This document shows, in pieces, positions 22,193 through 38,912 of a DNA stretch of 64,000 nt. A program made the translations under genes and the position numbers. The stretch's first letter is position 1. Each line of letters begins with the position of its first letter. The notes under the pieces were generated by a model, which had not been told where the DNA came from, searched no databases, and was given only the letters and a program-made list of their open reading frames with translations. Location of the stretch: the IMG/VR virus record IMGVR_UViG_3300021959_006010, positions 1 to 64,000 of that record. The stretch is one strand, 5' to 3'.

Positions 22193-23067
22193 TAACAGGA
22201 AGTAGTGGTTTTTTAGGAAACGCTCTCTGCAAAAGATTGTCTAATCTCGGTTATTTAGATGTTGACGGATTAGACATGGTTCCTGGCCAGTATACTAATA
22301 TTAGAGATTCGGTAGAAAACTTAAACGAAACGTATGATGTGATTTTCCATTTTGCTGCATTTGTAGGAGGCAGAGAAGGCATCGAAAACGATTATCTTAG
22401 AGTTGCAGAAAACATAGAGTTAGATCGAAATCTTTTTGGATTTGTTCAGCGTAACAACATAAAAAAGTTTATATATCCTAGTAGTAGTGCAGTCTATCCT
22501 ATAATTAATCAAGGAACAGATAATATTCCGCTATCTGAAGATATAATTGATTTTGCAACTAATAAAATAGGAGTTAGCGATCATTTGTACGGCTGGACAA
22601 AACTAACAGCAGAAAGAATGCTATGGGAAATAAACAAACACTGTGATACTAAAATATCTGTTGTTCGTCCGTTTAGTGGATACGGGCCTACACAAAGTAC
22701 AGACTATCCTGTTCCTAATCTTATTAACATTATCAAAAACAATCCTGATAATATAGAAGTTTGGGGTACAGGAGAACAAACAAGAGATTTTGTATATATT
22801 GATGATGTAGTTAAAACTTTAACATGGTGTATGGCCGATAATCAAAAATATAAAACATTAAATATAGGTACTGGTATACAAACTAGTTTTATAGATTTAA
22901 TCAATACTGCACATACAATTATACACGGCCGAAAGCCAAAAAATATTAAAAAATTAGTACATAAGCCAGTTGGTGTAATGCACCGTTACTGTGATCCAAC
23001 TCTACAACAAAAACTTAGAGTTTATCCTACTACTAGTTTAGAAGAAGGTATTAAAAAGTTTCTATGA
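22177..23067 (+). CDS. NAD-dependent NDP-sugar epimerase/dehydratase (extended SDR)
   Basis: ILVTGSSGFLG, HFAA, SSSAVY, YGWTK (YxxxK) and WGTGEQTRDFVYIDD. Confidence 0.9.
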   Translation: MGRILVTGSSGFLGNALCKRLSNLGYLDVDGLDMVPGQYTNIRDSVENLNETYDVIFHFAAFVGGREGIENDYLRVAENIELDRNLFGFVQRNNIKKFIYPSSSAVYPIINQGTDNIPLSEDIIDFATNKIGVSDHLYGWTKLTAERMLWEINKHCDTKISVVRPFSGYGPTQSTDYPVPNLINIIKNNPDNIEVWGTGEQTRDFVYIDDVVKTLTWCMADNQKYKTLNIGTGIQTSFIDLINTAHTIIHGRKPKNIKKLVHKPVGVMHRYCDPTLQQKLRVYPTTSLEEGIKKFL

Positions 23068-24851
23068 AAAGCATTATATTTTTTCAAGTAAACTTTCCGA
23101 TTGGGTTTGGACATTTTCAAACTCATTGGCTTCCTTATGCAGTAGCACGATTGTGGAGTTACGCTAAAACACATCCTGAAATTGAAAAAAACTATATTGC
23201 AAAAGATTTTATTTTTGAAAGACTGCCGATTGAAAGCTTTGTTGACAATTTAGAAAATGTTGACGTTGCGGCTTTTAGCTCTTATATATGGAACGAAAAT
23301 TATAACTTAGCAGTTGCAAAGAAGATTAAGGAAAAGTTTCCAAAATGTAAAATTGTATTCGGCGGTCCGCAAGTTCCAGACAACAGTAAAAATTACATAA
23401 TAGAACATCCCTTTATAGATCATTTATTCCACGGAGAGTCTGAGTACAATTTTGCAGACTTCTTATTAGGAAATAATACCGATAAAGATATCAGAGGAAA
23501 TCGCATAGAAGATTTAGATACTATTGTTAGTCCGTTTTTAGATGGTGTAATGGATAGCATCGTCGAAAAGCATCCAAATAAAAACTTTAGTGTGACACTT
23601 GAAACAAATAGGGGTTGTCCTTATGCGTGTACGTTTTGTGATTGGGGTAGTTTAACTTACAGCAAAGTTAAAAAGTTTGATACTGAAATTGTAAAAAAAG
23701 AAATAGAGTGGATTAGCAAAAACGGTATTAAGTTTGTTGATGTTGCTGATGCAAATTTTGGAATATTTAAAGAGAGAGATTTTGAAATTTTACGCCATAT
23801 GATTCGATACAAGAAAAAATATAAGTATCCCGAAACTTATAGTTTTAATTGGCAGAAAAATAGTACAGAAAAAACACTAGAAATGGTAAAGTATCTTACA
23901 AATAATAATAGTGCAAGAGGTATGACATTAAGTGTTCAAAGTATGTCTGAAAATGTATTAGAAAACATCAAACGTAAAAATATGGAAGTTAGTAACTACG
24001 AAAAAATATTACAAGAATGTAATGTTAAAAATATACAGACCTATACAGAATTGATTTTAGGACTTCCTGGAGAAACATACGAATCTTGGGTAAGCGGAAT
24101 AGATAAACTTTTAACAACAGGCCAACATAATAATATAGAAGTGTGGTTATGTCAAATGCTAGTAAACGCTGAATTAAGCAGCACTGAAAGCAAAAAGGAA
24201 CACGGCATTGAAACAGCAAATATTAAAAATTATATAAGTGGTGATACTGAAGACTTAGAAGGCATTGAAATAATAAAAAGCACTAATACGCTAACTTATA
24301 AAGAATTATTAGATTGTTATATGTATAGTTGGATGATTACTAACTATCATAGTTTTGGCTGGACGCAAATAATTAGTAGATGGTTGCACAATACACAAGG
24401 AATATCTTACAGAGAGTTTTATGATAAACTATTTGAAGCAGTAAAAGATACAAGTTTTTATTACGAAGTTAAAATTAATATACACAAGGCTTTTGAATCA
24501 GGTCTTATACAAGAAAAAGGCATGCACTATTACATTGCCGAATTTCAAAAAAAATTACACCAAAGCAGAAACAAAACATTACGTTTTGTAAAAGAGTTTG
24601 CTTTAAAAAATTATAGTGTACCTGAAGATGTTTTTACATTTACAGAATACTTTGTTACCGACTATGGAAATCAAAAAGACAGAACAAAAACTTTTAATAC
24701 TCCAGTATGGAGCATAATTAACAATATTGATCATACATATAAGTACAGATTTAAAATTACACAGCGAGTAAACACAGAAAATGAGTATTACGATAGTTTC
24801 TATTTTAGAAGAAGAAAAGGATGGGGCAAATGCATAGTAACATCCTTGTAG
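23064..24851 (+). CDS. B12-binding domain radical SAM protein
   Basis: N-terminal cobalamin-binding-type region (LPYAV, [8 protein letters not shown], VFGGP), then [16 protein letters not shown], DANFG and [10 protein letters not shown]. Confidence 0.9.
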   Translation: [595 protein letters not shown]

Positions 24852-37029: not shown

Positions 37030-38912
37030 AGAATATTATTTTAGTACAACCGAACTTTAGGCAAGGACCTAAAGAATTAAACGCTTACTATTTGCCTTAC
37101 TCAGTAGGAGTTCTATGGGCATACGCCACGCAATCTGCTTATGTAAAAAAGAACTATAATCTTATAGACATTATATGGAAACGTGACTTGATAGAAGATA
37201 TCATTTCTCGATTTGATAATGCAGACGTTGTTGCTTTTAGTACATATGTTTGGAACAAAAATTATATCTACAAATTAGCATCACTAATCAAAGAACGAAA
37301 TCCTAAGTGCATTACAGTGTTTGGCGGACCTGAAATTGAAATCGAAAACAAAGACCTATTTGAAAAATATCCATTTATGGATTATGTAGTAAAAACAGAA
37401 GGCGAGCATGTTTTCCAAAGTTTATTAGAATGTTTTGAATGTGCTGAACATACAGAAGGGTTACTAATAAACAGAAACGGAAAAGTTTTTGACACCGGAG
37501 CGGCCAAGCGAATAGACGATTTAGATAGCATACCTAGTCCTTACTTGGCAGGAGTATTTGATAATCTTGTAGCTGGTAATCCAGATGTTGAATGGAATGC
37601 AACACTAGAAACAAATAGAGGGTGTCCGTATGCTTGCACTTTTTGCGATTGGGGGAGTTTAACTTATAGTAAAGTTAAAAAATTCAAACTAGAAAGAGTG
37701 TATGCAGAATTAGAATGGATAGCGCAAAACAAATGTGGATTTGTAAGTGTTACTGATGCTAACTTTGGAATATTTTTAGAGAGAGACAGTTTAATTGCAG
37801 ATAAGCTTCTTGAAGTACAAGAAGAATATGGTTATCCGTATACGTTCAGTGTAACGTGGGCTAAAAATCAAAAAGATGGTGTTATAGATATTGTTAAAAA
37901 ATTAACAGATAGTCCTAAGTTTAATCAAGGACTAACAGTTAGTGTACAAAGCATGGATTTAAAAGTTTTAGAAAACATTAAACGTAAAAATTTAAACCAG
38001 CATAAAATTGAAGAAATATTTGATATATGCGAAAGTCGTAGAATACCAACATATACAGAAGTTATACTAGGACTACCTGGCGAAACACTTGACTCTTGGA
38101 AAAACAACTTTTGGGAATTATTTAACGCTGGCGCACATACTGGCTTGAATATATTTCAAGCACAATTGTTAGAAAATGCAGAAATGAATTTAGCCCAAAC
38201 AGAAAGTTTCTCTATGACATACCAAACAGTATATGATTATATGAGCGGTAGCTATGATGAAGATCCTGTTAAAGAAGGCGTTAAAGTAGTTACATCTACA
38301 AGTACTTTAAGTTTTGAAGAAATGCTAGACGCACAAGTGTTTAGTTGGTATTTAAATACGTTCCATGTCAATGGATTGACAAACTATATAAGTAGATACT
38401 TGAATAAAAACAATATTAAATCTTATAAAGAGTTTTATGAGGGACTATACGAGATTTTAAAACTTGACGAATGGTTTAACACGCAGATGCAAGAAACAAG
38501 ATACTATTATAATAAATGGATGACTGAAGGAGCAATTAACCATCCTAAGATTGCTGGTGTTGAAATACATGGTTGGAATTTAATACATCGAACTATTTTA
38601 AGTATGCATTCTGAAAAGATGACAGGTCATCTTTATAAACTGATTTATTCTTATTGCTATGATTTGTTTGATGATAAAAATCTCTTTGAAGAATTATTTA
38701 AACTTCAACGCAACTACTTTATTGATTACGATAACGTTAACAGCTATCCTATGACAATAAGTTTTAATTATGATTTCCTAGGTTTAGACATTGATAAGCC
38801 AGCAACTTATATTTTAGACTTTCCTGAAGATAAAACTATGAAGCAAGAAACCTTTCTTGAAAACATTTATTTTAGAAGACGCAGAAACTTTGGTAAAGCA
38901 ACAATAAGTTAA
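37026..38912 (+). CDS. B12-binding domain radical SAM protein
   Basis: [35 protein letters not shown] and ILGLPGET. Paralogue of 23064. Confidence 0.9.
   Translation: [628 protein letters not shown]

What the first reader, a model, noticed from the sequence alone, without database searches (positions are those of the whole stretch)
23064..38912. Cobalamin-dependent radical SAM paralogues in a phage, under visible purifying selection
Seen: 23064 and 37026 share the identical 27-aa block [27 protein letters not shown] encoded with many synonymous differences, and both end in YFRRR...GK. A third, more divergent member runs off the right edge (62908-63999). Established: B12-binding radical SAM enzymes methylate unactivated C or P centres or catalyse ring formation, and need cobalamin. 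Inference: the phage draws on host B12, which constrains host range. Each enzyme lies beside a GT-like gene and an NDP-sugar enzyme, suggesting C-methylated or rearranged sugars.
Basis: partly seen in the sequence, partly recalled or inferred. Interest (0 to 1): 0.62.

Follow-up and report, generated by a model that had tools for sequence, protein, structure and literature searches.

The report
Phage B12-type radical SAM methylases
An uncultured marine jumbo phage carries three TokK/CysS-like, probably vitamin-B12-dependent, radical SAM methylases inside a variable tail-fibre island that holds 16 radical SAM genes plus sugar enzymes, which points to a phage-made, heavily tailored glycan whose target and chemistry are still unknown.

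Summary
ORFs 23064-24851 and 37026-38912 are 38% identical over their full length. They share an identical 27-aa block whose 13 DNA differences are all synonymous. A third copy, 62908-64569 on the minus strand, runs off the window.

All three match TokK and CysS best among solved structures; both are cobalamin-dependent radical SAM methylases. The model of the 37026 protein overlays the whole of TokK (TM 0.83), and the two tryptophans typical of that clade are invariant.

Comparison with a sister phage shows strong purifying selection: dN/dS is 0.027 for 37026 and at most 0.07 for 23064.

The window is the start of a 275-kb T4-like jumbo phage contig from marine and estuarine samples, probably with an alphaproteobacterial host. 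It holds 16 radical SAM genes, 19 in the contig, most of the N-terminal-twitch type, in a variable island beside tail-fibre genes.

Two B12-type genes sit in parallel modules: a GT-B-like glycosyltransferase, an NDP-sugar enzyme and the methylase. A Rhizobiaceae contig has epimerase, B12-type radical SAM and UGDH genes in a row.

Glycan C-methylation is the best reading. The substrate, actual cobalamin use and dependence on host B12 remain untested.

The parts
23064..24851 (+). B12-type (class B) radical SAM methylase, paralogue 1, 595 aa
   Evidence: Pfam Radical_SAM 52 bits; B12-binding 20.6 bits, below the cut-off. TokK 7KDX E 6.5e-80 over residues 20-457. KedN5-family model 234 bits. Orthologue in the sister phage is 79% identical, dN 0.148, dS saturated.
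23598..23678 (+). 27-aa identical block holding CxxxCxxC and the CDWG tryptophan (TokK W215 equivalent), copy 1
37026..38912 (+). B12-type radical SAM methylase, paralogue 2, 628 aa; the most conserved gene of the island
   Evidence: Pfam B12-binding 47.9 bits and Radical_SAM 42.1 bits. TokK E 2.4e-76, CysS E 1.4e-62. AF2 pLDDT 86.3; Foldseek TokK TMq 0.83 over 624-634 columns. Against the sister phage: 98% aa identity, 13 non-synonymous and 96 synonymous differences, dN/dS 0.027.
37605..37685 (+). 27-aa identical block, copy 2
62908..64000 (-). B12-type radical SAM, paralogue 3, very divergent; window part of gene 62908-64569, 553 aa
   Evidence: CxxxCxxC at residue 178. PF02310 32.1 bits. 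TokK E 7.6e-35. W76 and W215 equivalents kept. Long unplaced branch in the tree.
20972..22192 (+). GT-B-like protein, remote paralogue of 35866
   Evidence: hhalign against the 35866 family: probability 98.6%, E 1.1e-15, 302 columns.
22177..23067 (+). NAD-dependent NDP-sugar epimerase/dehydratase
   Evidence: Pfam Epimerase E 9e-38; GDP_Man_Dehyd E 1.4e-16.
35866..37029 (+). GT-B fold glycosyltransferase of a phage-only family
   Evidence: AF2 pLDDT 91.6. All top Foldseek hits are GT-B enzymes. VIA-align Z 12.3 for GtfC, 12.0 for alpha-1,3-fucosyltransferase, 11.3 for T4 AGT/BGT. Only viral clusters in the Atlas.
38957..40183 (+). UDP-glucose/GDP-mannose 6-dehydrogenase family protein, divergent
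   Evidence: Pfam N-terminal and central domains. PDB UGDH and GDP-mannose dehydrogenase E about 3e-16. Follows the 37026-type gene in three related contigs, directly in one and two small genes later in the other two.
40203..42173 (+). 656-aa phage-only protein, possibly GT2-like
   Evidence: Weak only: Pfam Glyco_tranf_2_3 E 0.004; Atlas feature score 0.86 to a GT2 cluster.
43335..44213 (+). 292-aa protein sharing the conserved C-terminal core of the 35866 GT-B-like family
   Evidence: hhalign probability 96.3%, E 1.9e-9, 55 columns.
19402..20991 (+). N-terminal-twitch radical SAM (NF033640)
   Evidence: 297 bits against a cut-off of 170; CxxxCxxC.
27263..35869 (+). Run of five radical SAM genes (27263, 29376, 31416, 33528 N-twitch/SPASM type; 34694 with C-terminal SPASM), interleaved with unknown genes 28666, 30587 and 32671
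   Evidence: Genes 28666 and 30587 are absent from the sister phage.
44622..50748 (+). Run of five radical SAM genes (44622, 45710, 47008, 48417, 49504)
52905..56286 (+). Radical SAM genes 52905 (N-terminal SPASM-like) and 55066, with nitroreductase-domain gene 54108 between them
58408..62936 (-). Minus-strand tailoring genes beside paralogue 3: Asp/Arg hydroxylase 58408, fatty-acid-desaturase-like 59831, TauD dioxygenase 60609, unknowns 61627 and 62220
   Evidence: The same gene set lies with a B12-type radical SAM gene on the phage-like contig L019.
2..15775 (+). Structural context: giant virion protein (2-8524), tail collar fibre (9153), fibre-like proteins (11248, 13166 with Peptidase_G2), and 14702

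Best explanation
The three genes encode class B radical SAM enzymes of the TokK/ThnK/CysS/KedN5 clade. Each has an N-terminal Rossmann-type cobalamin domain, a CxxxCxxC [4Fe-4S]/SAM core and, shown by fold for the 37026 protein, a TokK-type C-terminal substrate domain.

By analogy with TokK and CysS the chemistry would run as follows. One SAM methylates cob(I)alamin. A second SAM is cleaved to a 5'-deoxyadenosyl radical that removes a hydrogen from an unactivated carbon. The substrate radical then takes the methyl from methylcobalamin. This may happen more than once on the same site.

In this phage, two of the enzymes belong to parallel three-gene modules: a GT-B-like glycosyltransferase, an NDP-sugar epimerase/dehydratase or 6-dehydrogenase, and the methylase. 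These modules sit within a variable island of 16 radical SAM genes next to tail-fibre genes. The most likely role is C-methylation of a nucleotide sugar or glycan intermediate, giving a heavily tailored glycan that the phage puts on its own fibres or on the host envelope.

Shown: family, fold, motifs, selection and gene neighbourhoods. Inferred: cobalamin use, methylation, a sugar substrate and the target of the glycan.
For: Family: TokK is the best solved match for all three (E 2.4e-76, 6.5e-80, 7.6e-35), and CysS is second. The profile of 15 homologues matches TokK at E 1.6e-116. The model overlays the whole of TokK at TM 0.83/0.79 and CysS at 0.77, against about 0.5 for TsrM and OxsB. The best NCBIfam model is the KedN5-family methylcobalamin C-methyltransferase, at 139-245 bits. 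W76, which lies under the cobalt in TokK, and W215 are typical of TokK/ThnK/CysS and are invariant here.

Selection: dN/dS 0.027 and at most 0.07 against the sister phage. The cobalamin domain is also constrained.

Sugar context: epimerase 22177, UGDH-like 38957, GT-B fold 35866 and its remote paralogues 20972 and 43335. The GT-B-like, methylase and UGDH genes stay together in related phage contigs. A true Rhizobiaceae contig carries epimerase, B12-type radical SAM and UGDH genes in a row.

Precedent: host-recognition islands of pelagimyophages hold glycosyltransferases, UGDH and radical SAM cassettes (PMC7029224). The phage also encodes an IscA-type Fe-S carrier.
Against: No biochemical test of cobalamin binding or methyl transfer was possible. 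The characterised relatives TokK and CysS act on pantetheine-linked small molecules, not sugars. The TokK substrate residue R280 is a serine here. No acyl carrier protein was found, so the substrate cannot be transferred from those enzymes.

The KedN5 model score is far below its cut-off of 700. PF02310 is below its cut-off for the 23064 protein. The third copy has lipid- and oxygenase-type neighbours and no sugar genes beyond one weak epimerase-like match. Most Clostridia and Streptomyces homologues lack sugar neighbours. SPASM/twitch radical SAM enzymes and Asp/Arg hydroxylases are also typical of peptide modification.
Confidence: 0.55

Rival explanations
1. The enzymes modify proteins or peptides. 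This could be post-translational C-methylation and cross-linking of tail-fibre or other virion proteins, or of a RiPP-like peptide, together with the SPASM/twitch radical SAM enzymes and the hydroxylases.
For: The island lies among tail-fibre genes (Collar, Peptidase_G2, Mtd_N). SPASM-like domains occur in many of the radical SAM genes. Asp/Arg beta-hydroxylase and TauD dioxygenase are present. RiPP C-methyltransferase models give weak hits of 20-67 bits. A conserved 73-aa ORF lies in the island. The best structural neighbours of the GT-B protein include the protein O-glycosyltransferases GtfC and SdgB.
Against: The RiPP methylase model scores far below the KedN5, TokK and CysS matches. The genes are tightly packed, leaving one small gene, which has no Cys and no repeats. 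The epimerase, UGDH and three GT-B-like genes are better explained by sugars. The bacterial triad in L022 has no peptide context.
Confidence: 0.15
2. They tailor a lipid or another small metabolite, for example an antibiotic-like or signalling compound, as TokK, CysS and KedN5 do in secondary metabolism, and not a glycan.
For: The closest characterised enzymes act on small molecules. Two fatty-acid-desaturase-like genes and a TauD dioxygenase flank the third copy. Nitroreductase-domain genes lie in the island. B12-type radical SAM lipid models (ladderane, HpnJ/HpnR) give weak hits.
Against: No carrier protein, PKS, NRPS or other scaffold-forming gene was seen. The conserved partners of the 37026 type are a GT-B protein and UGDH.
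Confidence: 0.15
3. The island hypermodifies phage DNA or nucleotides, for example with exotic glycosylated bases, to escape host restriction.
For: T4 alpha- and beta-glucosyltransferases are among the structural neighbours of the 35866 protein, Z 11.3. N-twitch radical SAM genes give weak hits to viperin, MoaA and QueE models. ORF 52252 has a weak QueC hit.
Against: No TGT/DpdA was found. The only thymidylate-synthase-family gene scores as canonical ThyA at 337 bits. The island sits in the structural and fibre region, not with the replication genes. About 23% of the genome is missing, so this is not final.
Confidence: 0.06
4. The proteins are cobalamin-domain radical SAM enzymes that do not methylate (ring formation or contraction, or dehydration, as in BchE, OxsB and AprD4), or they have lost cobalamin binding.
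For: Class B enzymes are chemically diverse. PF02310 is weak in the 23064 protein. The cobalamin domain evolves faster than the core, 61-66% against 86-88% aa identity.
Against: The nearest relatives by a wide margin are the methylases TokK and CysS. OxsB, TsrM and AprD4 are distant. W76 and 12 other N-terminal-domain columns are invariant.
Confidence: 0.09

Closest known systems
TokK / ThnK (carbapenem C6 sequential methylases; PDB 7KDX, 7KDY)
   Same: Three-domain architecture and whole-chain fold (TM 0.83), 28% identity, CxxxCxxC, the W76 and W215 equivalents; best sequence match for all three copies.
   Different: The carbapenam-binding R280 is a serine. The C-terminal domain shows no sequence similarity. 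There is no beta-lactam or pantetheine context. The genes are phage-borne and sit in sugar-enzyme modules.
CysS (cystobactamid iterative methylase; PDB 9N1B) and the NCBIfam KedN5 family (NF033712)
   Same: Second-best structure (E 1.4e-62, TM 0.77). KedN5 is the best NCBIfam model, at 139-245 bits.
   Different: The scores are far below the KedN5 cut-off of 700. No NRPS or enediyne context is present.
GenK / GenD1-type B12 radical SAM C-methylases of aminoglycoside sugars
   Same: A functional analogy only: class B radical SAM C-methylation of a sugar carbon. This rests on my own knowledge and on the gentamicin papers listed.
   Different: The phage enzymes cluster with TokK and CysS.
Radical SAM cassettes in host-recognition islands of T4-like marine phages, and in Campylobacter phages CP220/CPt10
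   Same: A variable island beside fibre genes holding glycosyltransferases, UGDH, Asp/Asn hydroxylase and radical SAM cassettes (PMC7029224). A T4-like environmental genome with 12 radical SAM genes plus Fe-S helpers (PMC5332604). 11-12 radical SAM genes in exchangeable modules (PMC2853527).
   Different: Those papers do not mention B12-type members or give a function. This phage belongs to the clade of Rak2-like phages (PolB 43-50% identical to Phosso, Atu_ph07 and 121Q). No GenBank phage holds a close homologue.

Membership tests
Class B (cobalamin-dependent) radical SAM enzymes | CxxxCxxC [4Fe-4S]/SAM motif in a radical SAM core | tested here: met
   Motif in all three copies. PF04055 at 52, 42 and 31.8 bits.
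Class B (cobalamin-dependent) radical SAM enzymes | N-terminal Rossmann-type cobalamin-binding domain | tested here: met
   PF02310 at 47.9-51.4 bits (37026), 32.1 bits (62908) and 20.6-23.4 bits, below the cut-off (23064). The TokK alignment starts at residue 12-20 in all three. The fold was confirmed for 37026 only.
Class B (cobalamin-dependent) radical SAM enzymes | Actual binding of cobalamin and cobalamin-dependent turnover | not testable with these tools
   Needs purified protein, UV-visible and EPR spectra, and activity assays.
TokK/ThnK/CysS clade of sequential methylases | [quoted passage not shown] | tested here: met
   Both columns are invariant in 15 sequences, including all three copies. 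The definition comes from bioRxiv 10.1101/2021.07.10.451909.
TokK/ThnK/CysS clade of sequential methylases | TokK-type C-terminal substrate domain | tested here: met
   The Foldseek alignment spans 624-634 of 628 residues. This is fold level only: there is no sequence match, and the other two copies were not modelled.
TokK/ThnK/CysS clade of sequential methylases | Substrate-binding residues for carbapenam (R280) or a pantetheinyl carrier context | tested here: not met
   The R280 position is a serine. No PP-binding protein is found in the contig. These are therefore not carbapenem or cystobactamid enzymes.
NCBIfam NF033712 KedN5 family | Score at or above the curated cut-off of 700 bits | tested here: not met
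   234, 245 and 139 bits. It is the best model, but these are not members by NCBI's rule.
NCBIfam NF033640 N-terminal-twitch radical SAM (the neighbouring genes) | Score at or above the cut-off of 170 bits | tested here: met
   19402 at 297, 27263 at 302, 29376 at 386 and 49504 at 236 bits. 34694, 44622 and 55066 score only 43-61 bits and are not members. The other genes were placed by paralogy.
Host-recognition island of T4-like marine myophages (PMC7029224) | Variable, non-syntenic block in the structural region holding fibres, glycosyltransferases, UGDH and radical SAM cassettes | tested here: met
   Fibre genes at 9153-14653 and 65289. Gene content differs between relatives. The VrlC and gp14 borders were not tested.

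The most novel reading that the evidence does not exclude
A large clade of TokK-like enzymes, seen so far only on phage contigs, performs single or repeated C-methylation on nucleotide sugars or glycans. This would yield branched-alkyl sugars not yet known from any glycan, displayed on jumbo-phage fibres or on the infected cell as a fast-changing coat. It would also make the fitness of these phages depend on scarce marine vitamin B12.
Probability: 0.12. Interest if true: 0.85.

Novelty: new variant of a known kind. Interest (0 to 1): 0.66.

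Why it matters
Cobalamin-dependent radical SAM methylases are known from bacterial antibiotic, lipid and cofactor pathways. I found no paper that describes them in a virus.

Here they form a distinct clade with thousands of metagenome relatives. That clade turned up only on phage or phage-like contigs. In 185,579 species genomes the only close hits are misbinned phage DNA, and no GenBank phage has a close homologue.

If they work as inferred, three things follow. They add new chemistry to phage glycan or surface tailoring. 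They give a testable function to the radical SAM cassettes noted without explanation in T4-like phages since 2010. And they tie infection by abundant marine jumbo phages to the supply of vitamin B12, a limiting and traded micronutrient in the sea.

Tried and rejected
1. GenBank phages: tblastn of the 37026 protein gave only two 24-25% hits in faecal phage contigs. The N-twitch gene 29376 gave only two Vibrio jumbo phages at 23%. There is no cultured model.

2. Literature: searches for radical SAM with jumbo phage and cobalamin found nothing specific.

3. Host from the tmRNA: BLAST against 401 alphaproteobacterial genomes matched only the conserved core of about 35 nt in 331 of them, so the host was not resolved.

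4. Supply genes in the contig: no IscU, flavodoxin, 2Fe-2S ferredoxin, acyl carrier protein, TGT or NrdD. No cobalamin riboswitch or any other Rfam family occurs in the window. The contig is about 77% of the genome, so these absences are weak.

5. C-terminal domain: searched alone against the PDB, it has no sequence relative.

6. Unknown island genes: 26209, 40203, 18458, 28666, 30587, 32671, 42154, 50745, 51434, 56288, 57001, 61627 and 62220 show no link to the GT-B-like family and no NCBIfam hit where tested.

7. DNA hypermodification was considered and put low.

8. Recent duplication was rejected: the copies are at most 38% identical, and each has its own orthologue clade.

9. Tools not used: read laying, complex prediction and the large representative search, because no claim needed them.

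Full report
**1. Observation**

ORF 23064-24851 (595 aa) and ORF 37026-38912 (628 aa) align over their full length at 38% identity, E 1e-133. The identical 27-residue block lies at 23598-23678 and 37605-37685. Thirteen of its 81 bases differ, and every difference is synonymous: 13 changes on about 15.5 synonymous sites, none on 65.5 non-synonymous sites, P about 5e-10 if changes fell at random. The block holds the CxxxCxxC motif. Both proteins end in the YFRRR..GK-type motif, and 11 further members of the 15-sequence alignment share it. The third member is on the minus strand. Its full gene is 62908-64569 in the contig: 553 aa, 27-31% identical to the others, and without that C-terminal motif.

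**2. What the genome is**

The window is the first 64 kb of an IMG/VR virus contig of 275,366 bp, estimated 77% complete. An identical protein also lies on a contig of 346,714 bp.

- The contig has T4-type core genes: PolB, topoisomerase II and baseplate wedge.
- Its PolB is closest to Sinorhizobium phage Phosso (50%), Agrobacterium phage Atu_ph07 (46%), a Vibrio jumbo phage, and the E. coli 121Q/PBECO4 group (43%). These are jumbo myophages related to Rak2; the Rak2 link is my own knowledge.
- It carries 11 tRNA genes and a two-piece tmRNA that matches the alphaproteobacterial model RF01849 at 127.8 bits. The host is therefore probably an alphaproteobacterium, but I could not narrow it further.
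- Runs that hold this DNA are marine and estuary metagenomes.

**3. What the three proteins are**

TokK, the cobalamin-dependent carbapenem methylase (7KDX), is the best solved relative of all three: E 2.4e-76, 6.5e-80 and 7.6e-35. CysS (9N1B) comes second. A profile of 15 homologues matches TokK at E 1.6e-116.

The AlphaFold model of the 37026 protein (pLDDT 86.3, pTM 0.84) overlays TokK over 624-634 columns at TM 0.83/0.79 and CysS at 0.77. This includes the C-terminal domain that the TokK authors call distinct to TokK. TsrM and OxsB reach only about 0.5, and MgmA and AprD4 about 0.45.

The best NCBIfam model is the KedN5-family methylcobalamin-dependent C-methyltransferase (245, 234 and 139 bits). 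That is far below its cut-off of 700, so these proteins are relatives and not members. PhpK, HpnJ, RiPP methylase, BchE, TsrM-type, HpnR and AprD4 models score much lower.

[quoted passage not shown] Both columns are invariant in my alignment, third copy included. TokK's substrate-binding Arg280 is a serine here, so the substrate differs. Cobalamin binding itself cannot be tested with these tools.

**4. Selection and history**

A sister phage contig of 91,914 bp (L095, L096) has the same gene order from 15.8 to 40 kb.

- Against it, the 37026 gene is 98% identical in protein, with 13 non-synonymous and 96 synonymous differences: dN/dS 0.027, dS 0.32.
- Every neighbouring gene is only 54-85% identical, with saturated dS. 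So 37026 is the most conserved gene of the island, or it was exchanged recently between the two lineages.
- The 23064 gene is 79% identical, dN 0.148, dN/dS at most 0.07.
- By domain, the radical SAM core is the most constrained (86-88% aa identity). The cobalamin and C-terminal domains are less so (60-76%), but still clearly constrained.

In a tree of 57 sequences (quick method), the metagenome, phage-type proteins form one group (SH-aLRT 85) with three subclades: the 23064 type (99), the 37026 type (100) and a 616-aa type. This group stands apart from a bacterial group of Clostridia, Streptomyces, alphaproteobacteria and a myxobacterium. The third copy is a very long, unplaced branch. The copies are therefore old paralogues, each with its own orthologues, not recent duplicates.

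Word searches found more than 5,000 and more than 6,700 metagenome relatives for the two proteins. A scan of one genome for each of 185,579 species found only two contigs above 50% identity, named Haliscomenobacter and Bacillales. The first is full of homologues of this phage's genes; the 7-kb second has only homologues of island genes. The "Puniceispirillum" contig L019, whose B12-type gene is 33-34% identical, is also full of this phage's genes. So the first and L019 are misbinned phage DNA, and the second probably is. No GenBank phage has a close homologue.

**5.

The window holds 16 genes with CxxxCxxC and radical SAM matches, and the contig holds 19.

- Besides the three B12-type genes, four genes pass the NCBIfam model for radical SAM proteins with an N-terminal twitch domain (NF033640, 236-386 bits). 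Most of the others are their paralogues.
- The island runs from about 15.8 to 64.6 kb and follows a giant virion protein and tail-fibre genes. An Mtd-type fibre gene follows it.
- Its GC content is 0.329, against 0.384 for the part of the contig beyond 70.8 kb.
- Its content varies between relatives. One relative goes straight from the 37026-type gene and UGDH to homologues of genes at 66-73 kb. Another has a different set of radical SAM genes. The sister phage lacks genes 28666 and 30587.

Similar islands with radical SAM cassettes have been noted, without a function, in pelagimyophages (PMC7029224), in a T4-like ocean virus genome with 12 such genes (PMC5332604), and in Campylobacter phages CP220/CPt10 (PMC2853527).

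**6. Sugar modules**

- Gene 22177 is an NAD-dependent NDP-sugar epimerase/dehydratase, E 9e-38.
- Gene 38957 belongs to the UDP-glucose/GDP-mannose dehydrogenase family.
- Gene 35866 had no family match. Its model (pLDDT 91.6) finds only GT-B glycosyltransferases: Z 12.3 for GtfC, 12.0 for a fucosyltransferase, 11.3 for the T4 DNA glucosyltransferases.
- Gene 20972 is a remote paralogue of 35866 (hhalign 98.6%, E 1.1e-15), and 43335 shares its C-terminal core.

Two parallel modules follow from this: 20972-22177-23064 and 35866-37026-38957. A true bacterial contig (Rhizobiaceae, with housekeeping genes around it) carries epimerase, B12-type radical SAM and a complete UGDH in a row.

The third copy differs. 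Its neighbours are two fatty-acid-desaturase-like genes, a TauD dioxygenase, an Asp/Arg hydroxylase, a weak short-chain dehydrogenase/epimerase-like match, and the Mtd fibre gene. A similar set accompanies a B12-type gene on the phage-like contig L019.

**7. Mechanism and rivals**

Best reading, overall confidence about 0.55 (about 0.85 for the enzyme class, about 0.5 for a sugar substrate): these are TokK-like methylcobalamin radical methylases that C-methylate a nucleotide sugar or glycan intermediate. Glycosyltransferases then place the product on phage fibres or on the host envelope.

Rivals:
- Modification of fibre proteins or peptides (0.15).
- Lipid or small-metabolite tailoring, which fits the third copy best (0.15).
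- DNA hypermodification (0.06). No TGT was found, and ThyA looks canonical.
- Non-methylating or cobalamin-free chemistry (0.09).

**8. Host B12**

I ran 12 Pfam family searches on the whole contig. None was for a cobalamin synthesis, transport or adenosyltransferase family, so their absence was not tested. There is no riboswitch in the window, and the only B12-binding domains are in these three proteins. The phage does carry an IscA-type Fe-S carrier. Near the third copy it has a DUF2201/VWA protein and a MoxR-type ATPase; from my own knowledge, marine phage genomes often label such a pair cobT/cobS. Reliance on host corrinoids is a reasonable inference but remains untested.

**9. Verdict**

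The enzymes are a new, so far phage-only branch of a known family, in an unusual setting.

Noticed in passing
window 19402-56286, plus contig 92883-93821, 94534-95214 and 156588-157715: Thirteen further radical SAM genes lie in the window, most with a twitch/SPASM-like domain at the N-terminus (NF033640), and three more lie elsewhere in the contig. That makes 19 in 275 kb. Their function is unknown, and 29376 has no solved sequence relative.
   Followed up: partly
window 37026-38912 against L096:10001-11887: The 37026 gene is 98% identical to the sister phage's copy (dS 0.32), while both flanking genes are 54% and 77% identical with saturated dS. This looks like a recent gene-sized exchange or sweep whose borders fall at the gene ends.
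   Followed up: partly
L010:12808-13171 (-), contig about 190,808-191,171: The phage encodes a two-piece tmRNA of alphaproteobacterial type (RF01849, 127.8 bits). ARAGORN predicts a 20-residue tag peptide. The contig also holds 11 tRNA genes.
   Followed up: partly
contig 136589-136891 (-): An IscA/A-type Fe-S carrier gene (PF01521, 47 bits), which could help load the many iron-sulfur enzymes. No IscU was found.
   Followed up: no
L017, L018, L019 (genome contigs records named Haliscomenobacter, Bacillales UBA5632 and Ca. Puniceispirillum): L017 and L019 are full of homologues of this jumbo phage's genes (30-80% identity). L018, a 7-kb contig, matches only island genes: the B12-type gene, 43335 and UGDH. 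They are most likely phage contigs binned by mistake, so host labels taken from them would mislead.
   Followed up: yes
window 14649-14664 and 57678-57685: TATAAATA, the T4 late-promoter consensus, is depleted in the window (3 matches against about 14 expected). It occurs as a tandem pair 38-53 nt upstream of gene 14702, which heads the run of genes leading into the island, and once upstream of 57741.
   Followed up: no
window 43112-43333 (+): A 73-aa ORF with a TTG start fills the only sizeable gap in the island. It is 85% identical to a 74-aa ORF in a related phage contig (L015:17509-17733), so it is a real and conserved small gene of unknown role.
   Followed up: partly
window 54108-55172 (+) and contig 265920-269822 (-): The N-terminal 90 residues or so of the nitroreductase-domain protein resemble the N-terminus of a 1300-aa protein elsewhere in the contig (29% identity, E 3e-6). 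This may be a shared attachment domain.
   Followed up: no
contig 68195-70710 (-), L001:8198-10710: A DUF2201 metallopeptidase/VWA protein and a MoxR-type AAA ATPase lie 4-6 kb from the third B12-type gene. They are 71-80% identical to the pair on L019. Any link to cobalamin is unknown.
   Followed up: no
contig 173698-176926 (-): Two adjacent proteins of 686 and 412 aa have Ser/Thr/Asn-rich low-complexity stretches, up to 62% Ser+Thr in 40 residues. PHROGs gave no match for the 686-aa protein; the other was not scanned. They could be substrates for O-glycosylation.
   Followed up: no
window 15800-58400: The island has lower GC than the part of the contig beyond 70.8 kb (0.329 against 0.384) and lower mean GC3 than genes outside it (0.243 against 0.284).
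   Followed up: no
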